Positions 161-19,529 of a stretch of DNA of 64,000 bases are shown here, piece by piece. The stretch spans positions 33,542,001 through 33,606,000 of the forward strand of contig NW_026889750.1 of the NCBI RefSeq assembly GCF_033153115.1, read 5' to 3'. The notes below the pieces were generated by a model. It ran no database searches. It was not told the origin of the DNA and saw nothing but the letters and a program-made list of their open reading frames with translations. This stretch comes from Saccostrea echinata. Its lineage: Eukaryota. The translations under genes and the position numbers were made by a program. Each line of letters opens with the position of its first letter. Position 1 is the stretch's first letter.

Positions 161-3048
161 CTATACTACTTTTATTAATCTCATTACGATGATTTGATGA
201 GTGTATACTTGCATCTGTTGTCACATTGTGCGTTTGTTCAAAGCGGCGAGATGATGATGATTTTGATAACTCTGTGGACAAAACTGATGACGTAGGAATG
301 TTGAATGTAGACGGTAAAATCGTTGATATCAAATTTCTTCTCAGAGTCATGGTCGACTTAAAAAGAGGCTCTAATGTTGATGGTGTTTTTGTTGTTGTTG
401 GCGGTGTCGATGATGATGATGATAAAAACGAAGATGATAACGATGATGGTCTCAGCATTGAAGGCCTGTCTTTGTATGACGTGTACTTTCGTGTTTGAGG
501 TAATGAAGTCGATGATTTTGTAGAACTAAATTCTGTTAATATTTCATTTGTGAGAAGATTCGTATTTAAGCTGGCATTTTGTGTTAAATGTGACTGATCT
601 TGTTTTTCTGTTGTGATACTGAACTCTGTCCTTTCTGAAAAAATATTTGAATTCAAATTCTGAGTCGACTTCACTGCAATTGCTGTTAATTCACGAGTTG
701 GCAGAATCGTAATCGATGCAGTTTTTGTGCTTCCTTCTGTGGATTCAGTGTTTGTTACCATAGGTTTTGTAGAATAGCTCTTTTCTTGTGTTGAAGTAAA
801 ATCATACTTGGTTGTCGATGTCTCAGCTATTACTGCTTCTGATGATAAAGAAAAGACTAGTCCATACAAAGATATTTACAGAAAAAAAGTAAAGTAAAGT
901 TGTTCCAAATAAGTTTCTTTTACTTTTATTACTTACGAGTTTTTTTAACTTTGATCCGAAATCCATGTCCCTGGTTTTTGAAATCAGACACAAATCTAAT
1001 ATTTACATAATTGTTCCGTGTAGTCACTTTCATTGGTCTATCAGTAACTCCACATTTTCTATAAGATTCCCCAAGAGAAACAGCCAGATAGTCACTACTA
1101 CACGATAAGCTGTTCTCTATATCCATGTCCACTATTATTATCGTCATGTTTTCTGTTTTGGGGTTCACTATTTCCCAGGAACAGCTAAGACCGGGAGGGT
1201 AGAAATCAGGGTATCCAGGGGACACTATTTCTACTTCTGACTTTGATAATTTGACCTTCCTGTGACATGCTTAAAACACAAATCACCAAATTGCTAGGCA
1301 TAAACTACAGCACTAAAAATTATACATGTATTTTTAAAAGCTTAAGAATGTTATTGACACAAAATGCAACAAAAATTCTTTAGCAGCTAAGAAATATGAA
1401 TTAAAAATTACTTACAGGCCCTAAAATATAATTCCTTGCTTTCTTCTCCTTTTGTTTTACTTATGTTGGCAAATACAGAAATCATGAGAAGTTGTCCTTT
1501 GAAATTTCGGGTATCAATGCTAAACCATGTAGTTCTGGGAGAGAGCACGATTTCTCTCTGGTAATTTGTTAGACGATATTTCAGGGTGTATGAGGTCAAA
1601 GGTATGTAATGTCCAACTGGTGGTAACCATTTGATAAACACGCCGGTTTTGGATGACGTCATTGTAATATTAACTGGTGGTCCAGGTGCTTTAACTAAAT
1701 GATATCATTATGATTCTCTAGAATGACATATTAATGATATTATTTATCAAATATTTGGCGAATGCTGGTTGTATTGAATCGACCGTACAAAATCACAATG
1801 GCTTCAACTTAAAATATGAAAACAGCTTAGAGATTTTCATAAAAATTTCACTAGAAAACTTTGTGAAAGATAATAATCTTACCTTTTGCTGTAACCAATA
1901 TTTGAAATCCTGTGATATTGATTCTCTTCATTCCACTAGAAAATAAAACTGTTTCCATTGAACTGCCATTTAAGTCAGAACTGTTTCTGCAAATTTTATG
2001 CAAACTGTCCCCTACTGATATAAACGCGTCAGTACAAGGCGGATGCTTTGTTGAATTATTGTTTTCTCCAAGATCGATTTGGAGAAAATGAAAATGCAAT
2101 ATATGTGTTTCTTCTGTTTTGATATCCCATTGACAGTGCACTCCCCTTTTTACTAGACTTGGGAAACCTGGAGAAGAAATTGTCTTCCTAGATCCTGGCA
2201 CCATGGTGATTTTCCTTCCACAGGCTAAAAAAAATCCAATTTTTTTTTATCTCTTAACGTTAACGCAAAGGGGGTAACAGAAGTATTTTTTTTTTGTAAA
2301 TTTTGTCCTATTTATTGCAATATATATAAAGTAGAATAAATAGAGTCTTTTACTAACGTTTTCGTATATAAAATGGTCTGGAAGGTTTGCTTAGGCCATT
2401 CTTGTTCTCAGCTGTCACTGTGATAAGGAACATTCTTCCAGCCTGCAAAGATGCATCTGTAAAGGAATTAAAAGGATGTACGTACTTAGAATTATACCGG
2501 TATAATTCAGATATGTAGTTTAAATATCGTTCCACACTCACCTATGATTGCCATAGGTATATTTGATCTGTATGTAGTGTGGCTCTCTTCCGGTAAAATG
2601 GTCGCCAGTAGCACGTAATTGGTGATGTTTCCGTAGGTTTGTGAAGGAACTTCCCAAGTAACAATAAAAGAATTGTCTCTATTCACAACATGGACGTTTT
2701 GGGGCTGAGAAGGTGGAGAACAATCTGTCATAAACAATGAAGAATTTTGATATTTTAATAACTTCAAAAGGCATATGATATTCTAGGTATAGCACTATCA
2801 TTCTAAATAATCTTTTAATCGGAATTTCTTTCAAAAAATCATTTCTTTCTCTATATTCATTTTTTGTGTTAGTAATTTTCAAATAAACAGTGTAACAAGC
2901 AAACATTGCAGAAATATGTTGATTTATGTGCGTTCTAGCATGTGCTGTCACTGCATCTTGTATATTCTACATAATGATCATGAAGATAAGAGACTTCCGG
3001 CTTGCCTTGTCAATATGCATTATAATGTTTTGCTATCTAATATATATA

Positions 3049-4483: not shown

Positions 4484-5311
4484 TTTCTCGACATTTAAAT
4501 ATCATTCTCATGCAATAAATTCATAAAAGATGATTGTTCCAAGATTCTCCCCTTTGATATTTTAATGACCTGCCAAGCATTGTGTCAAAAGGAAATAAAA
4601 CCATAAGTTTCTTACACCCTCTGCACTGTCAGGACATTGTCCTACTATCCTATATGTCGTAACATCGAGCAGGTGCACGTTATCCGGAAATGATAAGTGC
4701 AAGATAATACGATCTTGTATACATCCATCTCAACGAGATTTTCCGAATGGTCAAAGTGATGTTATCATTGACAAACAATTCCCCGGCTGACCATCCTTCC
4801 ACAATGGTCAGATTTATTGTTTCCTTTTATAGAAGAGTTCACACAGGTATGTTATGCTTTGGTACTATTACACAATAGTTTGCTTCTCTTTACTGATAAA
4901 TGTTCTAGATATCACAGAGCTCACTTGCTTTATTTGATATAAATTACTGATATTGGAAGACAAAAATGCATGTTCACTGATATAACATTCGATGGGCATT
5001 AATAGTTTCTTAATTTCAGCGCAGTTGCAAAGACCACTGAATTCGATGTTGCAAGATCCGTTATTATACATTGTATATAAACAAAATGGCCTTATACTAA
5101 ATAGTATCTACATGTTCTTAATTATAATGTTCACGCTTAGTAAAATAGTTCTCTAAGAAAACAGAGATTTCTGTGAAATAAACAAAATTGCTTATTCATA
5201 TACAATAATCATTTAAAAAGCTATTTTTTCAGTCAAATTATTAAAATAATCAGGAAAAATTATTAGAAATGACGTCCACTACTTTTGTTAATAAAAGTTA
5301 AGACTGTATTG

Positions 5312-5468
5312 CATAGGCGTCGGAAGCAAATTGAAAAAAAGGGGGGGGGCTAAACCAACGAAAAAAGGTAAGCCCCAATTTTCAATGCCTATATTATGTG
5401 TATCTTTGCAAAAAAAAGGAGGGGGTAAGCCCCCCTAGCCCCCCCCCCCCCCCGTTCCGACGCCTATG
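5312..5468. mobile_element. Short non-autonomous TIR element (MITE) with 5-bp target-site duplication
   Basis: TIR CATAGGCGTCGGAA...TTCCGACGCCTATG, flanked by TATTG on both sides (5307-5311, 5469-5473); internal poly-G/poly-C tracts. Confidence 0.8.
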
Positions 5469-5535
5469 TATTGATTCCTGAAATGCTTACTCTAACACAT
5501 ATTGTACATACTTATTTTGTCTTTTTACTAATTGT

Positions 5536-6917
5536 TCATATCTGCTGTTGTGTGTTAAAAGATACATGTAAATCAATGTCACTGTTATGATGTAGAGTAG
5601 AATCTCTCGTAGTTTTTCTGTCTTCACCCGTTTGTAACACAATGTCAGTTGTGAGATTCTCACAGTTTATCAATGCAGTGGAGACACTGGCTGCACTGTT
5701 TGTGACGTCATTATTGTTCTGAGTTTCATTATTGTTTGCTGAACTTGAGTCCATAGCAGAACTTTCGCTGGAGATGGAAAATACTGCCGAACCAGTTCCC
5801 TCCGATAAATTATTCACTGCTCGCCTGTCTTGCTCCATTTTCATTGCTGAGTCATAAGAAGGGAGATAATTTACATTTGTCTTTGAATATTTCCCAGGAT
5901 ATGGTGGTGGTGGGTCATCGTATCCAAAGCAGGAAATGGAGGATATAGTTCGATCTGCAATACGGACAAAATTTTTTGATTGCATTAAAGCTATTTGCAA
6001 AAACACTTTTTTTATTCTCTGTTCTATTCTGCATATGAAAATTCATGTTTTGTGATCCACGGTTTTCTTTTCTATAATATAAAGCAAGATATGATGTGCG
6101 TTTGATGTTTAAACATTTAACAAAAAGAAATTTGATAAATCTTTGAAATTTGCAATGTAAGCCACAGACTTACGAAGTCTTTCAATTCTTGTGCCCTCCA
6201 TTTCTGACCTTTCACCCGAGAGTTTATTGATAAGCACCCTGAGGAAGATTACTATCACAATCGCTGCCATACCGCCCAGGACGGAAAGAATCACTGGATC
6301 CTCCAGTACATCCGTCTGGTATCCTAGCAACGGGTCAAACAATACTTATATTGACCATGTGCATATCTGGGTTGACTATCATGTTGTTAATTTTGAAATT
6401 ACTGAAAAGAGGTAAATGCAAAATTATCATGCTTTAAGTTTAATTTTCATTTAACTCCACCCAGTAATTTCAAATTTTGAGGTATGATATAACTAATACT
6501 TATAGACATCAGGCTAGAAATAGGCTGCTCATCCCTAAAACCATATTCATCGAAATCGCATCCTATGAATTAGTCAGTAATAAATGCTGTATGGGTAAAG
6601 CAATTTTTAAAGAAAACTAATTATATACAGACATGTATATACATTAATCATGAAGTGGATTTTTTTATATAAAACAAGCCATATTTAATTTCTTCGCTAA
6701 ATATTACTACAGAGATACTTACGGTACTTATTGGGATTAACAGTTGTAATATGACTGGGCACAAGAACCACAGTTGTATCATCTAGGCATAAATAAATAA
6801 ATGAATAAGTTAAAATATTTGAAGGTTATTGGACCCTAATATCCATTTGAAATACCAAAAATGCCATCGATTCAATTATTACATGTCTTGTCACTTACCT
6901 GTGCTATTATTTGCCAT
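5536..6917 (-). CDS. Single-pass membrane protein with PPxY and LPxY motifs, paralog A (about 215 aa)
   Basis: Exons 6917-6899 (MANNST), 6782-6723, 6323-6174 (TM: PVILSVLGGMAAIVIVIFL), 5954-5536 (DDPPPPYPGKYSKTNVNYLPSYDSA); three phase-1 introns, all with GTAAGT donors; 648 nt in frame to stop. Confidence 0.85.
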
Positions 6918-7223
6918 CTTTAATAATTCATGCACTTACACTGGAATATTTAAAGTGTAAATTTTAAATTCAAGGACAAAGATATCCAAAACAGGAAATG
7001 GACTAATATAGAAAAGGATTTGGAAGGTATATACATTTGTAACATATTGAAGCTGTGAATTTGTTTACTGTGCAATACAAAAAATAAGAAATTAATTATA
7101 AAGCGGTTTCAATCTGAGAATTAAGTATACCATTTCCAAGATGTTTTTCAATGTAAAACTTCTTGGCCCCTTTTTTAATTCCCTTTATGTTTTGAAGAAA
7201 ATGGTTCAGTAATCCTTATGATG

Positions 7224-7225
<2 letters not shown>

Positions 7226-7312
<87 letters not shown>
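7226..7312. repeat. (TA)n microsatellite
   Basis: Uninterrupted TA run of about 85 nt. Confidence 0.97.
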
Positions 7313-7318
<6 letters not shown>

Positions 7319-8093
7319 AAAGTCATGAAATTATTTACTCTGATTCAAAACATATATACCGGGTATGTTGATAATAAACTGAAATTGAAAAGTAATGCAA
7401 GGTCTCGTAACTATATAGACACAGTATATAATACATCTTACCTTGTTCTATTGCTTAATATAGACACCTCTTTTTTACCATGATGCAAATATAGACTGCA
7501 ACAGCCGTCAATAGAATTTCACCAAATCACTAAGTTTAGATTTCTAAATATAGGGAGAATTTTAAATTCATCATCATAAAATGTTTCTGGCTACCACCCC
7601 TTCACTAGGGAAATCCTCAACACGTTTCCCTAATAGAAAGAACTTCACTTTTCTGTTAAATTTCTCCCAAACAATATGATATATTATGAAGAATATACAC
7701 CCTAATGCTGCATTCCAGCATAGAACAAGTTTTGTTTTCGTCTGTGGCCAAGTACGTGTGACCAATGTTCCGCTCCAGTGCCAACCACAGAAGATTTAGT
7801 CAACAATTTCAATCATTGCATATGTACGTGTGAATTATGCAATTCGTACTCCGTGTAGAAAGGACAACAACTGAAAAGTGGCCTGCTCAACTCAATACAA
7901 TGCACATTGTTTAAATGTGTTCAAAACTTCGTCCTCAAATTAAGGTCTACTATTCTTAGGGTTACCATGTTTCTGCATATAAATTACATTGAATTAAAAA
8001 TAAAACAGTTTAGAAGATATGTTTACCGTTTATATATTCTTTCTAAGATGTCGTTGAATACATGTATTTACCTTCACCAGAAATCACAGAATC

Positions 8094-9566
8094 TAAGGCC
8101 ATCATAAAAAAAATCTTTGTTTCCCCTAACCCGACCCTAAAATCTCAAGTTGGGTAGGTAGGTAGGTAAATATTTTTTTTTCTGACATCAGCTTTGAAAA
8201 TACATTCTGAAATTTAATGGAATAATACCTTTGTAAATAAGAAAAGTACAAAAGAAAGCGATTTGTAAACAGAATATCATACAAATGCCGCTTAAAAGCA
8301 AAATTTAAGGTAGATTAATTCACAACTATCATTCAATTGAATTTGTGAAATATCTCACAGTGTGCAGTGTAAATTTAATGAAATTTAATATTTAAAAAGA
8401 CAAGATTCTCTGATATGCAAAGATCGGACAACCTAGTATATTTTTCAAACCTAATATCAGCTTCCAGTGCTTAAACATGCAATGTACTTTTTCAAGGGCC
8501 TTGAATTGTGCAGTGGTTCTAGAGCATTTCGTTTTGGAGTCTCGAAGTAAGGAGCTGGTTCAAATCCCAATGCGGGACGTTGAGACCAGTCCTTCAAATG
8601 AGACTGTAAAAACTTAGGTCCAGTGTCGCAGTAGATGCTGACACGAAAAAGGTCCCTCACTGCTCAATGGCCAAAATTGCCGAGTACAAGTCTAAATTTG
8701 AGCTCTTCACCGGGCAAATGTTGTCATCCTAACAATTCTCAAAGGAATTTAAAGCAAAGAAACAGCCAATCTTCAATGGCCTAATTAAAGAAAAATACTC
8801 TCAGGAAGCTGTATCATGATTTCAAAAATAGTTAGAAAGAGTATGTAAACAACATTTAATTGAACCAAACCATATCAAAAAAATTATAAAAATGTATACA
8901 CAATGTCATAGTGACGCAGTTTAACCCAAGAATAAAAGGCATGAAGAAAGGACGTCTGAATTCTATTCATCAGGATGAAATATGCATATGCAGACTTCTG
9001 TGGTCCCATATAGTAAACACAGAAACATAGATGAACTGTTTATTAGATCAAAGCTCAAATTAAATAAAATACAGTGAAATTGAATGATGTGTTCATAAGG
9101 TGGGCTCCTCGTCTGCTCATGAGGCGGGCCTTACCATGCTTACTACGTAAATTAATTTTAAAAGACATGTTTGTAAATACCACCGAAACACTCTTTATTA
9201 GTCATGGTATATTTTATTAACGAAGTGTTTCAAGAGTGTAGGATTCTAATAAGCTAAGGGCAGAAGGTTGATATGTCTCCGTTGTTTTATAATAACATGA
9301 ACTAAGTCACTAACCCTCTGTGACCACATGTTGTGGGTACCATTTTGTTTCCAACAAATGCTTGAAAATCACAGTAGAACAAAATCTGCCGTTCTGATAA
9401 AAACATATTTTGATGAAATTGTATTTCATAAAAGTTGATAAACATAAAAAAGAAATATTTGAATAGTTTTAAAAAAAAAAAAAAACACTTTTCAGTCGAA
9501 GCTATTTAATTTAAATGGGTCGGTCGTGTTAGGGGAAACAAAGGTATTTTTTTTATTTTGGTCTTA
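8094..9566. mobile_element. Non-autonomous DNA transposon with imperfect TIRs of about 45 bp
   Basis: Left end TAAGGCCATCATAAAAAAAATCTTTGTTTCCCCTAAC matches the reverse complement of the right end GTTAGGGGAAACAAAGGTATTTTTTTTATTTTGGTCTTA; TA at both outer ends. Confidence 0.7.
8496..8772 (+). mobile_element. Degenerate tRNA-derived SINE nested in the TIR element
   Basis: A-box-like CAGTGGTTCTAGAGC and B box GGTTCAAATCCC (8557-8568), then a body and A-rich tail; a similar tail fragment near 23215-23260. Confidence 0.5.
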
Positions 9567-9970
9567 GATGAAAATCATGTTTAAATTTTTATTTTCAAGT
9601 GTATCGTGAATTAAGATTTTACAAGATGCAGATTTCCATTACATTTTGGAAAGTAATAAATATCTAACACTGCATTAAGAGGTATAAAGAAGAATGATTT
9701 AAGAAACATCACATCACCGCTGTTTGCATCTTTCGTTGAATTTGCATTTCAAATATCTACAAAAATGTACATGTAAATATGATAGTATAAGTTAAAAAAA
9801 GTGAACAAAGCGCTATGCATTTCATTTTATTTATTCTGTACCTTGATGTTTCCCAATTCAATACCGTATGTAATGCAAGTACTTAATCCAAAAGCATTTA
9901 GATTTAAATATGGGGAGGTCCACATTATTTTAACTGTTATTGTAAGAGTTGGATTGTATTACACATGTAA

Positions 9971-11449
9971 TTATATATTCTCTTCATCACTGGACCTTCT
10001 GGGATTTAAAGTTATTCCATCAACACATATAGATGTCTGACGTGGGGAACGTTCAGTTTCTTCACTAAACACCTGTTGATCATCTGTTCTAGGTTCACAC
10101 TCTCGATTTGTCAAAAGTTCATGGCACACTTGGTTAGAGACCGAATCATTTTCTGTCTCTTCATTGTTCATATGATCGCTATGGTCTAAACCAACACTCT
10201 CATCCAAGACAGAAAATTCCGATTGTGGAGTCATTTCATTGATACTGCACATCCGCAACTCGGGTGCCATTTTGATTGCGGAGTCATAAGAGGGGAGATA
10301 ATTGATGTTGGTTTTGGAATATTTTCCTGGATAAGGTGGAGGGTCATCGGAAAATGGAGTCGGTGATGGTGATACTGCTGGTTCGCTTTCGTGATCTGTA
10401 CAATAATACTGAACACTTAGAACTCTTAATAAACAAGATACTTTTGACGAGGGTAGGATAATCTAAGAAATGCATCTATTCTTTATCATTCAACGATGGC
10501 TTGAAAATAATGTTTTAAAATTCTCCATCTAATCATCTGCTTCATGTTTCTATGTTGTCTAGGATCTAAGCTCTTTATGTTTAGTCCACTATATAGACAA
10601 CCACTTCTGCATGTTAGTAGAATGACTTTATCTCATTGAAACATTCTCTTATCTTATTGATACAATGCCAATGGTCCTCAATGCTATATTATTTATTTAA
10701 GTTTTTTTTTATTCTAATCTCATGTTTGTAGTCTCTATGATTTGTTGTGTCTAATTTTTTACCCAGTAAACTGGTTCTCTTACCTCCCCTCCTGGTTTGT
10801 CTATGGTGTCTGTACTGCCGATTTTTAATTCTACTAATAATTTCCCTCCCTAGAAACAAAATTCCAATGAAAAGGATCACCCCGGTAATAGCCATAAACA
10901 CTGGGTCCTCCATTATAAAGACCTTTTGTTCTGAATTCAAAAAACGCCCTAGTTTGTATCTTTTTCAAGCATTCGAAGATGGAGATGGATGAGTTACATT
11001 CAAGAATACATAGATTTTTATAAACAATGTGAGCGACATGGTTAAAGTGAAGATAAATATAACAAAGCTAATTTTTTCCATTTTACTGAGAAGATGAGCA
11101 TACAGAGAGGGTCTTGACAAAGTCTAATACTTAATAGGGTGATAATGATGGTGTCAGTGTTTTGAGACCCTTTATCTATCCTGCTATTTCCAAATTTATG
11201 ATATTATTTCCCTACCTTTTATGTTCGTTATGATAATATGACCCACTCCATTGGTTGGCAAGGAAGCCTGGGGGTCTTCTTCTACAAAAAAAAAACGAAT
11301 TAAGATTTTTTTTTTTTTTACTATAATATTCTACTTTCCGTGCAAAATCTGAATCATTGTGCATTATTGATGTTTTAAGGAGCCATTTCATTCAGCACTC
11401 GATGCTTTTGTTTCCCTACACTATCCATACCTGTACCATTTGTATCCAT
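9971..11449 (-). CDS. Single-pass membrane protein with PPxY and LPxY motifs, paralog B (about 218 aa)
   Basis: Exons 11449-11431 (MDTNGT), 11281-11216, 10930-10784 (TM: PVFMAITGVILFIGILFLG), 10395-9971 (DDPPPYPGKYSKTNINYLPSYDSA); all phase 1; 657 nt in frame; same exon layout as paralog A. Confidence 0.85.
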
Positions 11450-12985
11450 CTGTATTCTACATCAGCTGCCAAAAAGAAAATAAGACTTTTAAAGATGAAA
11501 ATCGAATTCCCATATTTTTAAATTAAATTTGCACATGTTAACAGAATAGCTACATATTATCATATGGTCAATCGTTAGTTATACATGTACGTTGTGGAAT
11601 TAAACCTTTCAAAAACAGTTTTTGACCATTCATCCCTGTTTGTGTTGATTTTTATTCACATTACCCCGATATATATTTGAATGCAGCTGTAAAAGCGTAT
11701 TTATGATTCAAGAGATTCAGTCTGTTAATATATGCTCTTTAAAACTTGCCTTACTCTGTACCTTTATTTTCTTCTCAGAGACATAACTGGCCAGAACTGT
11801 CCGTATATATATTATTTTAAATCTTGTTTTTAAAGTTTGTCTTTACAACTACTCTCCTTAACAAAGAAAGCCCACTTACCGTCATAAAATCTGCATATCG
11901 CGTCCATAAATATGTTGTCACGAGACAAAATTCAATTGGGTATTGTAAATTCGTTGTTGACATTCTTCTGTACTTACAGTACTAAAAGTACTAACTTTTG
12001 TCAATCTTACTAAAAAAATCACTCTATAATCAATCGTATAGTCCTGTATTTCAATGTCACGATCCGTTGAGCACTGAAACGTGTATTTTGATAGTTGTTT
12101 ATAATTCGTTATCTCTGTTCCACACCGCTTTTCACTTCACTTTTAAAACACTTATAACATACTTGTTATACTCGTAAATTACGCAATCACGACAAATGTT
12201 CAGTTCTATGTAAAATAGTTGCTTATAACTTCTTCTTTCTTCAACAATAAACATAGATCCACATTGTCTGTTTATTTGAACTTACTTGAAGTGTCGTGAC
12301 AAAAAAACTAGGTTACTTTGTCATTCGACGTAAAATTGATAGTCGAGTGTACGTTGTAGAGTTCTGTGCAACACTTTCATTAAATTTTCATTGCTGAAGT
12401 ATCCTTTATCTTAAAAGTAAATTTCGTAAATACCATTATCTCATTTTGTTCGTGTCATAAGCAAATTGTAAAATTTTATAATTCTACATTGTTCTAAAAA
12501 CTATTTGTGTCAAGATATCAATGGAGTAAATTTTATCTGTTTATAATTTGCAAAAATCCAAAAACAGTAACAGTTCTCTAAATATCCTCTAAATGTTAAT
12601 GTAGACTTGGGTATTGTAGCTCGATCTACTAAAAAAATATACCTTCCTCAGCTGCCAAGGAAATTATTAAAGTGTTTTGTTTTCGTTTCCTTTTTATTCT
12701 TTACTATACGCATTTATTCATTTATCCATGAATGTCGTGCGTTTTGTCCTTGCACTCGCACCAGTAAACTGATCTTTGATTTTTTGTTCGAGTTTGACCG
12801 CTTTAATGACAATGGCTTAGAAGTATTTTCAGTTTCTGTGCATTTATTAATCTTAACAATCGAAGACGTCTTTGTCAGCAAATGTCTGTAATCAGTGCGT
12901 AGGAAATTGTTGCTCTGCTAAATATATAATCAACTGTAACACTGAGTAGACTTTGATTTCCTATATACATGTACATACGTATGTT

Positions 12986-13757
12986 TAACCTCATTTACAC
13001 AGAGGTTGGCGACCGTTGAGATTTGGATAAATGCCTAAATGACTTTCAACAGATACTCGGCCATCGCCATGATCGCAGGGTCTACATTGTGTCTTCAAAG
13101 TTTTGACCATACCCAAACCAGTCTCTCAAGATAACAAAAGGCGCCTTTACATATGTATAGATTGTTGAAAAACATTTGTTCGATGTTGTTCGATTTCTTT
13201 GCGATCTCTGGAAGCCTTGAAAAGCTCGCCTCTGTGTAAAATCAAAATTGAAAGAGATCAGAAGAGAAAAAACTTGTATTATAAAATTGGGGATACTGTC
13301 ATATTTCATAGTGATCTGTCCAGATCAATTTGCGGTCAAGGAACGTGCACTAAAAGATCTCTCAGAGACTAATGGTTACATTGCTTTCTGTTAGCATCCT
13401 TTGAGTTTGCTAAAAGTCTGCTTTGCGACCAATCGAGACCACTGAGAGATCTTAGAAGATGACCGAGAATTCAATTGTGACCAAGAGATATCATTGAAAG
13501 ACCAAAAGAGATTTTTGATAAATAAACCTCGAGAGATCATTAGGAGATCTTTGAGCTATCTTTCTGCACTCTTTGAGAGACAGATTACCAATGACAACGT
13601 TGCTAGATTGTTTTGAGGAGAGTCAAAATTTTGAAGAGCTCTGAGAAATCCCAAGAGATTGTGGTAATAACTGGGTGACTGTTAATATATTGTTCAGACA
13701 TCTACATGTAGCCAATTCTGCCTCCACGGTCGCTATCTCTGTGTAAGTGGGATTTAA
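12986..13757. mobile_element. Non-autonomous TIR element, possibly PIF/Harbinger-like
   Basis: TTACACAGAGGTTGGCGACCGTTGAG on the left versus CTCCACGGTCGCTATCTCTGTGTAA on the right; T(T)AA flanks; decayed GAGATC-rich internal repeats. Superfamily assignment is a guess. Confidence 0.55.
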
Positions 13758-16058
13758 GGGAATCAGTCTATCAAAGAATGCCTAAAAAGCGCAGAAAATC
13801 GCCCAAATATCTTTTCTTTACCTCCCAAAGATCTTTTTAGGACTTTCAAAGAAATGAATGTTTTGAGCGACTAAGATCTCTTAGTGATATCTTTCAGTCA
13901 TGCACTGTTCTCACACATAATCTTTCAGTAAACTGCAGTGTATCAATCTCATTGATACTCTCGTGTGCTAACGCTCAGTAAACTCTCAGAGGATCCTAGA
14001 GAAAGCAAGGTTTTCATTTATATTTGAGGGATTATTCAGTTTGTTCAGTGTGATCTCCTTATTGGATTTACACTAGTGTATACAGAGACTTTTCGAGGCT
14101 TTGAGAGATCACGAAGAGATCAAACAAAATGTAAATTGCCAAATTGCATCTATTCTTTATAACATACATGTACTTCATCAATTTTAGATTTTTATTTTTA
14201 TCCAACATGAGACACATGATCAATATAAAAATGTGACTGGGAAAATATGCTTTTGTTTGTCCGTCTTTATCAAACGAATTTTATAATTGGTATTCGTTAC
14301 AAATTTTTCGTGATATATAATTTATTATTATACTAGTATACTGAATAACCTAAAGCTCCTCATATATTCAATGCGTATGTATAATTTTTTATACATTTTT
14401 AACTCGTATCACGTCAGATCTTTATATTATATATTTTTTATGCAAATTATTCATTTGATTCTTAAAGGAAGTTAAATGTACATTTTTTAATTATTTAAAA
14501 AAAATTAACTTAAGTTTGAGTTTATAAAAAATGCAAATTTGATTTGGCTTTTGTTCCTGTTTGATGAAGGATGGAGCATTAATATGCATGGTAAGAACCG
14601 GTGGCTTAGTAATGTAATGCCAACGCTCAATTAGCATTATTCCATTGAGATGGTTACTCAAGTTTTTTTCAAATTCATAGCTAGAGACTTAAGATTTATA
14701 AAATGAATTGTCATTGTTTTGTATATACCGTATGTACGATTGTAGTGTTCATACCCTAAGATAAGATAAATTGATATTTTTTTTTAATTTATCCTTTTTG
14801 TCTTTTATATTAACACCATGTTATTAACTCTTGCCTATAACATTACCTTTAAAAAAACGAATTGTATTTTAAAAAATCGTTTTTGTATTGATCATTGAAT
14901 TTTTTTAAAGAATCAAAATTGCACTTGAAAATGCGGAAAAGGTGGAAATATTTCAAAACCTTCTTATTTAGGAAAGGAATATGTAGGAGAAAATTCATTT
15001 GGTATCCCATACCTTCTTTAAGATAACAGATAAGCCATTATACGTATCATTTTTCGGAATTATACAGGCGCTTGAGTTCTCTTTCAAGAATGCCCCGAAC
15101 TTGTATGATAACACACCTGACAACACACCTGGTACATGACTTAATGTAAATTTTGTTTAATGTCGTCGAGGGTACAAATTCACCAAAAACACAAATCTGA
15201 AGGGGGGTTGTTTGTTTGTTTTTCAAATGTCTAACTAGTATTTACTTTGAGCTATCAAAGAAGACTTTGAGTTATATAAAGTAGACTTTGAATTATAAAG
15301 AAGACTTTTTAAAATACTTTTGATGGAACACAATAATAAATGGTCGAGTAACATAGGAGTAATGAATTATAACATTTTTTAAAAAATAAAATGGAAGACT
15401 GCATCTTATATGAATAACTTTATCTTTATTAAAAGATTTTAGTGATGCGATTTTTGTATTAAATAATTTCCTCGACTTAGAAATGTCGATTTATTTCTTT
15501 TAGGACTTAGTCTTTGAAATAAAACCAAAATTATGATTTAGAAACCATTATGGCTGAGATATTGTCACAATTTTCAGCTACTTTCAATTTGTTTAGAGCA
15601 CTCTGTATTTATTATAAATTAACAGCTAGAAGTCTAAACTAAGTGCGTGTAAAACAAACAATTTAATTTTGCTTTTGTCTTTTATTAAATAAGTAAACAA
15701 ATTGATCACAATAAAATGTATTCATACACAAGCATTTGATGTTATTGACAGTATAACAACAAATTCATGTTCATGTATATAAATTAATACATGAGTAATC
15801 TCTCTTAATAAGAATACCCACATCAGTCACAGTAACGCATATGGCACTTTTCGTGACTTCATTCATAATGTATAAAACAGAACTTCAAATAATCAAGATA
15901 AAAGGCTTGATATATCTATTTTATGTAAAAATAATGTATTTGGAATATACATGACATTGACAAAACAAGCATAGTTTAGAAGGTGTGTACATTATAACAC
16001 TGGGCATTAAAATTTACCTTCAACAAAACATGAAATGTTTCCCTATCACCCAGTGTCA

Positions 16059-18255
16059 TTACAGCCGAGACTGATTATTAGGAACGTCTAAATCGTTCAC
16101 AATCTCTCCCACATTATCTGCTTCAGAGTTTAGTGATAGGCTTCCAGTAGCCCCTTGTAAATCACTTTCTACAGTCATACCTTCTCCTCTTTCAATATCT
16201 ATAGAAGTATCTGTTGGTGGGTGTACAGTGCTCACCTGTCTATCAATGTCGTAATTCACAAAGTTTTCTTGAGATGTTTCTAAGTCTCCACCCACCATGA
16301 ACACTACTACATCATTACCGCTTTCACTTGTTACTTCTGATGTAAGCGCCTTTTGGTCAACTTCCTCCTCCTTGGCCCTTGCCACTTCCGCTGCGTCACG
16401 GACCCACTGCAGACGTCGATTAATTTCAATTGCCGATTCGTAAGAAGGAAGATAATTCACATTTGTCCGGGAATATTTACCAGGGTAGGGAGGAGGTTCG
16501 TCAGCAAGCCAGTGGAGAAAAGAAGGACCGGGTCGAATACCACCTAATAAAAGAAAAGTCATGTTGCAATATTTCTTTCAAAATTTTATATGGGTTATTT
16601 TTTATAAAAAAAGATTCTATTTGATCTCAGAAACCAAGATTTACATAATCTGCAAAAATATCAAAAGTCAAGAAGCTGCAACATGAATCTTAGGGATTTT
16701 AATCTTCAATATTTTCAGAAATGGAAACACGTTAGCAGCAATAATTTTTGATAAGGGTTTTCCATACAATCATTTCCTGATTTTCATAAAAGGTTGATAA
16801 TTTGAAAGTTTAAATTAGAATTTGACCATCTGTTGTCTAGTTATTTTTTTTAATCGAATGATAACAGATTCAGTAGATAATTCACATTTGAAAAAGCAAA
16901 ACGAAAAGTTAACTAGAATTATATTATATTCTTAAGCTATCCGTCTTTGAAAAGTGGTACACAGTACTTCATTCATTACACATTCTACAACGTACAATAT
17001 GTAAGAAATAAGATTGCGTATATTTACAAATCCCATATACTGTTTCTGCTTGAATATTTTTCTAAATCAATATACACGTAAAAACAATAAAGGTATATAC
17101 GTAAAGCAGGCATAACATTTTAATCCTTGGATGTTATACTAGACTTCAGTACTTCCGATACCTATGGACCTTTACGGAAAAAACAAAAATTTTCCAATTC
17201 TACAAAAAGATATAGAAGATTGCAAAAAAAGGTCATTTTCTATAATATTAGAATAAATTGCAAATAAGTTTTTGAGAGAAAAAGTTAAAAGATTTGTATA
17301 AAAAAAGGGGGGATTAGAGACTTGTCAATTGTTTATCTGAGGCATAAGATCCTTTTTGAAAAGGTAGGACTACTGGTTTAACATTGTCATACGTACTACA
17401 TGTGTTGTTATTGGGTCGTCGAGGAGTCCTTATAAAGGATATGATGGATTTAACAGTAAATATCATCCCTATGAATACAATAACGCTGGATACCACGGCA
17501 ACCAGATGGACAGTCCCTTCTTCGTCATATCCTGTAAGGGGACACAACTTTCACTGTAATCCTACGTATTAATACAAGATTTTAGAACAATTAATTATGT
17601 GAAGAAACATCATACGTGTACCTTCACACATTGATTGAGTATATGAAATACGTAGTCGTGTATATATAAACTTCTTTGACCTTCAATCCTGTTATCAATA
17701 AATTATTTCATTTTTCAAAGTTAATTTACTTTGCTTTGGTGTATCATAAAAGTCGTGGTGGACTGATGGAAGTGTGGTTGTTGTTTTCTCAAGTAATGTC
17801 GATGAGTCACCTGAAAGCAATATTGAGTGCTGACCATGCATAAATATTTCTTGTGGAAATTTGAAGTAAGTGAATATTTACTTGTAATCACATGAATTCA
17901 AAGATCGCTCACAACTAATGCTCTCATGATCAATTTTATTAAGCCAGTTGGCAAGATAAGAGATAACCAATTAATGACTTGCATTGTCCTTCTACCAAAA
18001 ATGTTGAAAATAGTCTCTAGATTTTTTGACAATTAAAACTTTGTCAGAAGAACAAGATCTAAGAAACGAGAAATATAGCAAAGTCTTGGGATATGTTTGC
18101 ACTTATGAAAGAAGAAAAAATAATTATTTCTGCAGTTCGATATAAAAAAAATTATTGTCTATATGGTAAATAGCTTCCCCTGTGATCTACTTACCAGCCA
18201 ATAGAATTGAAGTGCTGCTGTTCTCATCAGCTACACCTGTAACATTGTCGTGCAT
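16059..18255 (-). CDS. Single-pass membrane protein with PPxY and LPxY motifs, paralog C (about 253 aa)
   Basis: Exons 18255-18195 (MHDNVTGVADENSSTSILLA), 17810-17730, 17531-17397 (TM: VHLVAVVSSVIVFIGMIFTV), 16543-16059 (DEPPPYPGKYSRTNVNYLPSYESA); all phase 1; 762 nt in frame. The exon 2 and 3 donors (GTAAAT, GTACGT) are less certain. Confidence 0.8.
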
Positions 18256-18939
18256 TGTTGGACAATACCATAATGAAAACAATGCTTAAGTGTCCGTAGA
18301 AGTAAAGTTAGAACCATTCAGGTATTTCCAGTATGTTCTAGATATGTCTACGTGTTGTCTGTATATATTTAAACACATAAACAAATAATCTATTTATACT
18401 TCAAGGTTCCGCAGGTAAACATTGCGAGCTGAACGCATTCTTACGTTGCGTAGCACTATATGTATCAATTAAAATCTAAATAATTATGTTTATGCTACAG
18501 TGCGATATTGAACAGTTTCTTAGTACAAACAGGTTTTTGCTCAGTATATTGATGGTTTTTTAGGTGATCCTCTAAAAACTAAAGAAGCGACAAAAATATT
18601 AACATCGACGTGTGTCTTCGTAATTCTTTTTTTCAACAAGTATTATTTTTCACAGGACTCCTCGTGACAAGGGATCAGATTATACCAAAATCCTATACCA
18701 ATTATGATGTTTTCATCATATTTGTTTTATCGTCTACACATCTCGGTTAATCAATTGTCCTTGATTCAGGTGCTTAGCCACATAGAAACCCTTCCGTCAA
18801 GTATGATAAGAATGGGGTTTTTTTTAAAATTAATTTTGGCCCTGAAAAAAATGATGGCAGACACTGACCTTTTCAAAATGGTCTTGGGTCATGACATTTG
18901 TGATGGCCATTCCCGGTCATACAATAATGATTTACACAA

Positions 18940-19322
18940 TAATGCAATTCCAAGTTGTTTCTATGTTTAGCGTCCGCGTGCGCCTTGTTTTTTGACACCC
19001 CATACCACAAAAAACAAACAAAATCATGACTCCTCAAATTGAATATTCTGGTCAAAATCACTGAATTCAGTCAATTTCTCAAAATATTTGAATACAATGT
19101 CATATTAGGAATATTGTAAGCATTGAATACCTTGATTTTGCTGAAGAAAAGGTTTTTAATAGATAAAATAGATTTATGAAATCAAATCCTTTGAGTGACG
19201 TCATTTTTATGACCATAAAGTCTGTGTTTTATTTTTTGGTTTTTATGTTTTTTGCGAATAGGTAGGTAGGTTTTTGAAAGATGGGTGGATGCTAAACAGA
19301 GAAAAAACTTGGAATGGCCTAA
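18940..19322. mobile_element. Non-autonomous TIR element
   Basis: Left TAATGCAATTCCAAGTTGTTTCTATGTTTAGCGTCC matches the reverse complement of right GGATGCTAAACAGAGAAAAAACTTGGAATGGCCTAA. Confidence 0.6.
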
Positions 19323-19529
19323 TGGCTTGTACTCCAGGGTTCTCACAATAGCTATTACCCTTTCACTAAACAATGGAAGAAACATTTTTTGAATCAGAGT
19401 GAACAAAAGCAGCAATTTTTAAGATGTCATTTACTTGTATCTTTTCCCATAGTCCTTAATACAGAAATGAGTAGTCACTATGTTATACGTGTGACTTTTT
19501 GTTAAATTCATATAATGAATATGGAGCTA

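What the first reader, a model, noticed from the sequence alone, without database searches (positions are those of the whole stretch)
5536..18255. Tandem triplet of orphan Commissureless/PRRG4-like PY-motif membrane adaptors
Seen: three co-oriented genes, each with four coding exons (all phase-1 introns), no signal peptide, a short Thr/Ser-containing N-terminus, one TM helix and a cytoplasmic tail. The proteins are barely alignable except for a near-invariant block D[DE]PPPYPGKYS[KR]TN[VI]NYLPSY[DE]SA. Established: PPxY and LPxY bind WW domains of Nedd4-family HECT ligases; a PPxY followed by LPSY[DE]xA in a single-pass protein is the layout of Drosophila Commissureless, and LPSY also occurs in vertebrate PRRG4, both of which down-regulate Robo receptors. 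Inference: a lineage-specific family of Nedd4 adaptors in which divergent ecto/TM parts pick different cargo and a fixed double-PY module recruits the ligase. The conserved 11-residue linker (with Lys and Tyr) suggests tandem-WW binding or a ubiquitin/phospho switch.
Basis: partly seen in the sequence, partly recalled or inferred. Interest (0 to 1): 0.8.

Follow-up and report, generated by a model that had tools for sequence, protein, structure and literature searches.

The report
Oyster-only PY-motif membrane adaptor genes
Three neighbouring, expressed oyster genes encode small single-pass membrane proteins that share only an almost invariant PPPY...LPSY tail module, most likely a docking site for Nedd4-type ubiquitin ligases. 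The family is undescribed and found only in oysters, it resembles fly Commissureless in layout, and common descent with Commissureless is not shown.

Summary
The window is Saccostrea echinata chromosome DNA. It holds three minus-strand genes, each with four coding exons and only phase-1 GT-AG introns, exactly at 5536-18255. They are NCBI LOC133178513, LOC133178523 and LOC133178535, all named "uncharacterized protein".

Spliced contigs from four public runs (two studies) carry the junctions of genes A and B. A fourth paralogue (D) lies on another contig.

Each protein has an N-terminal N-x-S/T sequon, no cysteine in the ectodomain, one transmembrane helix and a disordered acidic tail. The tail holds D-x-PPPYPGK-x7-YLPSY-x-SA, with an 11-residue spacer that never varies in length. 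About half of the identical residues use different codons between paralogues, so selection on the protein keeps the block, not gene conversion.

An exhaustive profile search of 1.84 billion proteins and three word searches found relatives only in Ostreidae, in four old orthogroups.

No curated family is met. Pfam Comm gives weak co-linear hits (at most 18.4 bits, cut-off 27), and an unrelated TM+PPxY protein scores 13.1.

Verdict: a new, lineage-restricted family within the known class of PY-motif membrane adaptors of Nedd4 ligases. Comm-like layout is real; homology and any Robo link are unproven. Another PY-tail (CYYR1-like) family was noted earlier elsewhere in this genome; it is distinct.

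The parts
5536..6917 (-). Gene A (LOC133178513, 215 aa). Coding exons 6917-6899, 6782-6723, 6323-6174 and 5954-5536 (stop codon 5538-5536). All introns are phase 1.
   Evidence: P0001 is 100% identical to the window and maps exon by exon. Spliced contigs join 5954|6174 and 6323|6723 with GT..AG on the minus strand in 4 runs.
7442..7835 (-). Non-coding 5' exon of gene A, spliced to 6940 (5'UTR intron 6941-7441).
   Evidence: Joint 6940|7442 (CT..AC on the plus strand) is seen in runs X1, X2 and X5. A 1235-nt contig in X2 spans 7835-7442, exons 1-3 and 5954-5450.
5839..5916 (-). Conserved block of gene A: DPPPPYPGKYSKTNVNYLPSYDSAMK.
6174..6323 (-). TM exon of gene A (helix at about residues 36-64).
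   Evidence: Kyte-Doolittle peak 2.70 at residues 36-54. AlphaFold2 gives a helix at 36-64 with pLDDT 94-96.
9971..11449 (-). Gene B (LOC133178523 isoform X2, 217 aa). Coding exons 11449-11431, 11278-11216, 10930-10784 and 10395-9971. All introns are phase 1.
   Evidence: P0004 maps exactly. Joints 10395|10784 and 10930|11216 are seen in 4 runs. Loose ends at about 11283 read on into exon 1, the ATGGATACAAATGGTAC sequence.
10271..10348 (-). Conserved block of gene B: DDPPPYPGKYSKTNINYLPSYDSAIK.
16059..18255 (-). Gene C (LOC133178535, 253 aa). Coding exons 18255-18195, 17810-17730, 17531-17397 and 16543-16059. All introns are phase 1.
   Evidence: The model read from the sequence equals P0107. 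The orthologue XP_062595753.1 in S. cucullata is in the same 90% cluster as P0017.
16425..16502 (-). Conserved block of gene C: DEPPPYPGKYSRTNVNYLPSYESAIE.

Best explanation
The three genes belong to an oyster-restricted (Ostreidae) family with four orthogroups. The proteins are small type III membrane glycoproteins: N-terminus outside or in the lumen, one TM helix, C-terminal tail in the cytosol. The tail carries a rigid two-part class-I WW-domain ligand. It consists of PPPY, an 11-residue spacer of fixed length (PGK-x3-T-x2-[ND]-Y), and then LPSY-[DEN]-S-A-[IMLV], which runs straight into a short helix. The most likely mechanism is that this module docks the WW domains of Nedd4-family HECT ubiquitin ligases, possibly two WW domains at once. 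The protein and the membrane proteins it associates with through its divergent ectodomain and TM helix would then be ubiquitinated and sorted to endosomes and lysosomes, as with Comm, NDFIP and other PY adaptors. Shown here: the genes are real and spliced, A and B are transcribed, the family has old paralogues, the block is under strong purifying selection, the one-TM topology features are present, and WW+HECT ligase genes exist in the same genome. Inferred: WW binding, ligase recruitment, cargo selection and subcellular site.
For: Gene models equal the NCBI proteins, and spliced contigs from 4 runs in 2 studies carry the junctions. In 33 family members from four orthogroups, PPPYPGK, YLPSY and SA are invariant and the spacer has no indel. 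Between paralogues, 10-14 of the 19-23 identical residues in the block use different codons, and there is no DNA repeat of 40 bp or more across the three genes, so the conservation is selection on the protein. Topology: one hydrophobic segment, acidic N-flank, basic C-flank, a conserved N-terminal N-x-S/T, no hydrophobic signal-peptide-like stretch near the N-terminus (max 10-residue Kyte-Doolittle 1.15-1.94) and no ectodomain cysteine. AlphaFold2 gives a TM helix at 36-64 (pLDDT >90), a helix at 110-124 starting at the Tyr of LPSY (pLDDT about 86), and disorder elsewhere. LPSY-D-[ES]-A-hydrophobic is the extended motif reported as critical in Comm (GLPSYDEAL) and present in PRRG4 (GLPSYEQAV) (PMC5578492). 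Comm's PPCY and LPSY are needed for Nedd4-dependent Robo1 ubiquitination (PMC12101832). The language-model atlas places both P0001 and P0107 nearest to PY-motif single-pass families: Comm first among named clusters, then BEAN1, TMEM52B, WBP1L and LDLRAD4. The genome has at least three loci with 3-4 WW exons next to HECT exons: C54 at 63.86-63.87 Mb, C9 at 40.745-40.769 Mb and C37 at 0.62 Mb.
Against: No binding, localisation or functional data exist, and no paper names these loci. PPxY and LPxY are short linear motifs that also bind non-ligase WW proteins such as YAP, MAGI and WWOX. The invariant linker residues (G, K, T, [ND]Y) are not explained by known WW contacts and may serve another partner. 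No curated family or solved structure matches.
Confidence: 0.6

Rival explanations
1. The block is a membrane tether for non-ligase WW-domain proteins, such as Yorkie/YAP, KIBRA, MAGI-type scaffolds or WWOX. The proteins would then act by sequestering or scaffolding signalling components at a membrane, not by ubiquitin-dependent sorting.
For: The same PPxY/LPxY motifs bind many class-I WW domains. The abstract of PMC3764795 (listed) says PRRG-initiated signalling most likely depends on proteins with WW domains. Two PY motifs at a fixed short distance would suit a tandem WW pair. The genome has WW exons away from HECT loci.
Against: The LPSY-D-x-A-hydrophobic extension is the form characterised for Nedd4 binding in Comm. 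All the nearest look-alike families are ligase adaptors or substrates.
Confidence: 0.15
2. The family is the lophotrochozoan branch of the Commissureless family by true common descent, and it down-regulates Robo receptors in oyster neurons.
For: Comm is the Pfam family hit by most members: 5 of 33, at 13.5-18.4 bits, always co-linear from the TM helix to LPSY against model positions 7-87. Comm clusters are the top named atlas neighbours of two paralogues that share only about 24% identity. Both families lack a signal peptide, have one TM helix, and place PPxY upstream of LPSY-D-x-A-hydrophobic.
Against: All scores lie under the 27-bit cut-off. An unrelated 95-aa TM+PPPPY protein without LPSY (P0130) scores 13.1 bits on the same model, so most of the signal is generic. 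The atlas's own rule (2 of 10 named neighbours agree) flags the family call as probably wrong. The spacer is 11 residues here against 5 in Comm, and the ectodomain is much shorter. No intermediate relatives turned up in 1.84 billion proteins. The Comm profile finds nothing over its cut-off in this genome.
Confidence: 0.1
3. The conserved tyrosines (four in 16 residues) make the block a phosphotyrosine docking site, so the proteins would be transmembrane signalling adaptors that recruit SH2/PTB proteins. The PY resemblance would be secondary, or part of a phospho-switch.
For: Y95, Y106 and Y110 are invariant and Y99 is frequent. The proteins have the build of transmembrane adaptor proteins: a tiny ectodomain and a long disordered tail.
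Against: None of the tyrosines sits in a recognised ITAM, ITIM, YxN or NPxY context (read directly). The invariant prolines and the Leu of LPSY are what WW ligands need and are not explained by SH2 docking.
Confidence: 0.07

Closest known systems
Drosophila Commissureless (Pfam PF15957 Comm)
   Same: No signal peptide, one TM helix and a cytoplasmic tail with PPxY upstream of LPSY. LPSY is followed by an acidic residue, x, Ala and a hydrophobic residue (GLPSYDEAL in Comm, YLPSYDSA[IM] here). Comm is the best weak Pfam hit and the best named atlas neighbour.
   Different: The Pfam cut-off is not met (at most 18.4 bits against 27). The spacer is 11 residues against 5. The ectodomain is about 20-55 aa against about 130. 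Comm is reported only from insects/arthropods. No Robo link has been tested.
Vertebrate PRRG1-4 (proline-rich Gla proteins)
   Same: Short single-pass proteins with LPxY and PPxY in the tail. PRRG4 has GLPSYEQAV, and two PRRGs lack signal peptides (PMC5578492).
   Different: There is no Gla domain here (no Pfam Gla hit in 33 members). The motif order is reversed: LPxY comes before PPxY in PRRG.
NDFIP1/2 (Nedd4 family-interacting proteins)
   Same: Membrane adaptors that recruit Nedd4-family ligases through several PY motifs (PMC12101832). From memory, unchecked: one of these motifs is an LPSY-D-E-A type.
   Different: From memory, unchecked: NDFIPs have their PY motifs N-terminal to three TM helices. 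Here a single TM helix precedes the motifs.
CYYR1 / Shisa-like adaptors, including the CYYR1-like tandem array on contig C29 of this genome
   Same: Small single-pass proteins with PY-rich tails, encoded in tandem arrays in the oyster.
   Different: The ectodomain here has no cysteine. The tails of the C29 array are P/G/Y-rich repeats without the block. The CYYR1 profile does not hit the window genes.
Other small PY-motif single-pass proteins (BEAN1, TMEM52B, WBP1L, PMEPA1/LDLRAD4, MLANA)
   Same: Overall build, as seen by the protein language model (scores 0.86-0.91).
   Different: No sequence-profile match to any of them. All of them are chordate families.

Membership tests
Commissureless (Pfam PF15957) | Scores over the curated Pfam gathering cut-off (27 bits) | tested here: not met
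   5 of 33 members hit, at 13.5-18.4 bits. The three window proteins do not hit. The unrelated control P0130 scores 13.1 bits. The genome-wide scan with the profile finds nothing over the cut-off.
Commissureless (Pfam PF15957) | Signal-less single-pass protein with PPxY followed by the extended LPSY motif (GLPSYDEAL) in the cytoplasmic tail | tested here: met
   PPPY, then 11 aa, then LPSY-[DEN]-S-A-[IMLV], all after the only TM helix. Comm's motifs are taken from PMC5578492 and PMC12101832. The spacing differs: 11 residues here, 5 in Comm.
Commissureless (Pfam PF15957) | Diverts Robo receptors from the cell surface to late endosomes | not testable with these tools
   Needs cell or in vivo assays.
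PRRG (proline-rich Gla proteins) | N-terminal Gla domain; LPxY upstream of PPxY | tested here: not met
   No Gla family appears among the Pfam hits of 33 members, even at E up to 10. The motif order here is PPPY and then LPSY.
NDFIP | PY motifs in an N-terminal cytosolic region followed by three TM helices | tested here: not met
   There is one hydrophobic segment only, and the PY block lies 35-40 residues after it. The NDFIP architecture is from established knowledge, not checked here.
CYYR1 / Shisa-like transmembrane adaptors | Cysteine-rich ectodomain; matches the CYYR1 or Shisa profiles | tested here: not met
   No Cys residue lies N-terminal of the TM helix in A-D. CYYR1 hits 1 of 33 members at 13.5 bits against a cut-off of 31. 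The window is not among the genome's CYYR1 hits.
PY-motif membrane adaptors/substrates of Nedd4-family ligases (a functional class, not a homology family) | Cytosolic [PL]PxY motifs on a membrane protein, with cognate WW-HECT ligases in the same organism | tested here: met
   Two invariant PY motifs lie on the predicted cytosolic side. At least three WW+HECT loci are present.
PY-motif membrane adaptors/substrates of Nedd4-family ligases (a functional class, not a homology family) | PY-dependent physical binding to WW domains and ligase-dependent ubiquitination or sorting | not testable with these tools
   Needs biochemistry.

The most novel reading that the evidence does not exclude
Commissureless is not an insect invention. 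On this reading the oyster family is the surviving lophotrochozoan branch of an old protostome Comm-type adaptor, kept recognisable only by TM helix, then PPxY, then LPSY-D-x-A-hydrophobic. At least one paralogue would control Robo or another guidance receptor during oyster neurogenesis.
Probability: 0.1. Interest if true: 0.75.

Novelty: new member of a known kind. Interest (0 to 1): 0.4.

Why it matters
PY-motif membrane adaptors decide which surface proteins Nedd4-type ligases remove. Each known adaptor (Comm, NDFIP, PRRG4, PMEPA1) turned out to control an important receptor. This family is undescribed. It has four old paralogues whose outer parts have diverged freely around one frozen 25-residue module. 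That makes it a natural experiment on how cargo choice and ligase docking are separated.

The fixed 11-residue spacing gives a clean test of tandem-WW recognition. [quoted passage not shown] On present evidence the resemblance is best read as convergence on the same short motifs.

The practical value is modest: four unnamed gene families in commercially important oysters gain a function hypothesis.

Tried and rejected
- **Curated family membership:** Pfam scans of the single exons by reference and of 33 family proteins found no family over its cut-off.
- **Solved structures:** the PDB sequence search with the family profile gave 0 hits at E up to 10.
- **Comm in this genome:** the Comm profile run against the whole genome found nothing over its cut-off and nothing at the window.
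- **Part of the CYYR1-like PY-tail array noted earlier in this genome:** rejected. That array is on contig C29, its tails are P/G/Y-rich and lack the block, and the CYYR1 profile does not hit the window.
- **Block kept identical by gene conversion or recent duplication:** rejected. Block DNA identity between paralogues is only 65-78% with many synonymous differences, and there are no direct repeats of 40 bp or more.
- **RNA genes in 4500-19500:** none at Rfam gathering scores.
- **Literature on the orthologous LOC ids:** no paper found. A search for Comm in lophotrochozoans surfaced nothing relevant among the 15 papers listed.
- **Structure search of the AlphaFold model:** not run, because 109 of 215 residues have pLDDT below 50 and only two helices are confident.
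- **The look-up of encoding contigs:** Synteny in other oysters and transcript contigs for gene C could not be fetched.
- **Joined exon models:** none was sent to any search tool. Searches used single exons by reference or database protein ids. Exons were concatenated only inside a script to check that they equal the annotated proteins.


Full report
**What is there**

The window is G000:C1:33542001-33606000 of an oyster genome. The last exon of the first gene is 100% identical to NCBI protein LOC133178513 of Saccostrea echinata.

A six-frame pattern search finds PPxY...LPxY three times, all on the minus strand. Reading the DNA and mapping the annotated proteins P0001, P0004 and P0107 back gives three genes. 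Each has four coding exons, GT-AG introns and phase 1 throughout.

- Gene A: 6917-6899 | 6782-6723 | 6323-6174 | 5954-5536
- Gene B: 11449-11431 | 11278-11216 | 10930-10784 | 10395-9971
- Gene C: 18255-18195 | 17810-17730 | 17531-17397 | 16543-16059

All three genes are annotated only as "uncharacterized protein".

**Transcript support**

Logan contigs of four public runs (two studies, two organism labels) were laid on 5450-11449.

- They carry joints 5954|6174, 6323|6723, 10395|10784 and 10930|11216.
- All four joints have CT..AC on the plus strand, which is GT..AG for minus-strand genes.
- A further joint, 6940|7442, reveals a non-coding 5' exon of gene A.
- Loose ends at about 11283 read on into gene B's first coding exon.
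- One 1235-nt contig holds all five exons of gene A.

The runs are only guessed to be RNA, but contigs lacking the introns at the annotated boundaries show a spliced form. It is backed by the identical annotated protein and by an orthologue in S. cucullata.

**The proteins**

Each protein has these features:

- a polar N-terminus with N-x-S/T at residue 3-4;
- no ectodomain cysteine;
- one hydrophobic segment, with an acidic N-flank and a mostly basic C-flank (net charge 0 in gene A over the 15 residues tested);
- a 140-180-residue acidic, Ser/Thr-rich tail.

AlphaFold2 with a 33-sequence alignment gives a confident TM helix (36-64). A second helix (110-124) starts at the Tyr of LPSY. The rest is disordered. 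This fits a type III orientation, N-terminus out and tail in the cytosol. That orientation is an inference.

Paralogues share 22-31% identity overall. In 33 family members PPPYPGK, YLPSY and SA are invariant. The 11 residues between the Tyr of PPPY and the Leu of LPSY never gain or lose a residue, although the middle of the spacer varies in Crassostrea A-type proteins.

**Selection, not conversion**

Within the 26-codon block, 10-14 of the 19-23 identical residues use different codons in any pair of paralogues. DNA identity there is only 65-78%. No direct repeat of 40 bp or more links the genes.

**Distribution**

An exhaustive HMMER profile search of 1.84 billion cluster representatives gave only 26 hits. 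Three word-indexed searches, including one built from the most divergent subgroup, added more.

Every hit that carries a name is from Ostreidae: Saccostrea echinata, S. cucullata, Magallana/Crassostrea gigas, C. virginica and Ostrea edulis. The unnamed hits are short Logan, ENA or JGI contigs.

A maximum-likelihood tree resolves four orthogroups, each with several genera:

| Orthogroup | Support (ultrafast bootstrap / SH-aLRT) |
|---|---|
| A | 96/98 |
| B | 79/78 |
| C | 97/96 |
| D | 100/100 |

The duplications therefore predate the split of these genera.

The D paralogue of S. echinata (LOC133191368) lies at G000:C23:5029573-5031669. It has three coding exons, again with phase-1 introns flanking the TM exon. 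So the family is old within oysters and so far invisible outside them.

**Comparison with known families**

No Pfam family reaches its cut-off and no PDB chain matches.

Comm (PF15957) is the family hit by most members: 5 of 33, at 13.5-18.4 bits against a cut-off of 27. Each hit is co-linear from the TM helix to LPSY.

The protein-language-model atlas puts a Comm cluster second for P0001. With only named clusters searched, Comm clusters rank first and second for P0107. BEAN1, TMEM52B, WBP1L, LDLRAD4 and MLANA follow.

As a control, an unrelated 95-aa TM+PPPPY protein without LPSY (P0130) scores 13.1 bits on the Comm model. Most of the Comm signal is therefore what any small TM+PPxY protein gets. 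The atlas's own agreement rule also warns against the family call.

From the literature:

- Comm has PPCY at 220-223 and LPSY at 229-232.
- The extended motif GLPSYDEAL is critical in Comm, and PRRG4 has GLPSYEQAV.
- Both PY motifs of Comm are needed for Nedd4-dependent Robo1 ubiquitination.
- Comm homologues are stated to be unknown outside insects (PMC5578492, PMC12101832).

The oyster motif YLPSY[DEN]SA[IMLV] reproduces that extension, with PPxY upstream as in Comm. The spacer differs (11 against 5 residues) and the ectodomain is far shorter.

Three other families fail defining features:

- PRRG has a Gla domain and the reverse motif order.
- NDFIP has three TM helices after its PY motifs.
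- CYYR1/Shisa-like proteins have a cysteine-rich ectodomain.

The CYYR1-like tandem array that an earlier report of this scan describes elsewhere in this genome sits on C29. Its tails are P/G/Y-rich and lack the block. It is a different family.

**Mechanism**

The best reading (confidence about 0.6) is a family of PY-motif membrane adaptors or substrates of Nedd4-type ligases. The partners exist: at least three loci combine 3-4 WW exons with HECT exons.

The fixed spacing, and the helix that begins at the LPSY tyrosine, suggest a two-site ligand, possibly for two WW domains at once. That is inference.

The rivals are tethers for non-ligase WW proteins (0.15), true Comm homologues acting on Robo (0.1) and phosphotyrosine adaptors (0.07).

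**Limits**

- No Comm, PRRG or NDFIP sequences were available from a tool, so no profile-profile test was run.
Exon references or database protein ids were used. Exons were concatenated only inside a script to check identity with the annotated proteins.

**Verdict**

"Comm/PRRG4-like" holds as layout, not as kinship. This is a new, unnamed family within a known kind of system, and the interest is moderate.

Noticed in passing
G000:C23:5029573-5031669 (loci L004, L021): This is a fourth paralogue (D, LOC133191368, 184 aa) with the same block (DNPPPYPGKLSRTNINYLPSYNSAVQ). It has three coding exons instead of four, again with phase-1 introns around the TM exon. D-type proteins end in a conserved SP-x-VFTL.
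   Followed up: yes
window 8050-8850 and 9250-9650: The intergenic stretch between genes A and B is a dispersed repeat. A DNA search with 8450-8850 raised 5803 first-look candidates; all of the scored matches are copies on other contigs, mostly at about 80% identity. It shows very high contig depth in all four runs. A non-canonical joint 8211|9392 (AT..CG, with one extra letter) is present in every run. No Rfam family matches.
   Followed up: partly
proteins P0001 residues about 133-142, P0004 about 134-142, P0107 about 168-176 (tail exons of the three genes): A second, weaker conserved element lies 20-45 residues after LPSY: hydrophobic-x-F-[ST/x]-hydrophobic followed by Ser or acidic residues (VFSISSES, EFSVLDES, VVFMVGGD). 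It may be another short linear motif. Its function is unknown.
   Followed up: no
window 7219-7324: A long (TA)n microsatellite lies in the 5'UTR intron of gene A. The read tool cut reads there.
   Followed up: no
window 1851-2204, minus strand: An open stretch here matches the CUB domain (PF00431, 29.2 bits, over the cut-off). It is an exon of a neighbouring, unrelated gene downstream of gene A.
   Followed up: partly
protein P0131 (ENA contig, organism unknown): A 102-aa protein has a TM helix, then DPPPPYPG, and about 30 residues later PPSYDSI. The layout is similar to this family but the protein falls outside it (E 2.8). It might lead to more distant relatives.
   Followed up: no
window 10368-10760: Low-depth contigs cover the last intron of gene B. 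This may be retained intron or pre-mRNA, or the other annotated isoform (the mapped protein is isoform X2).
   Followed up: no
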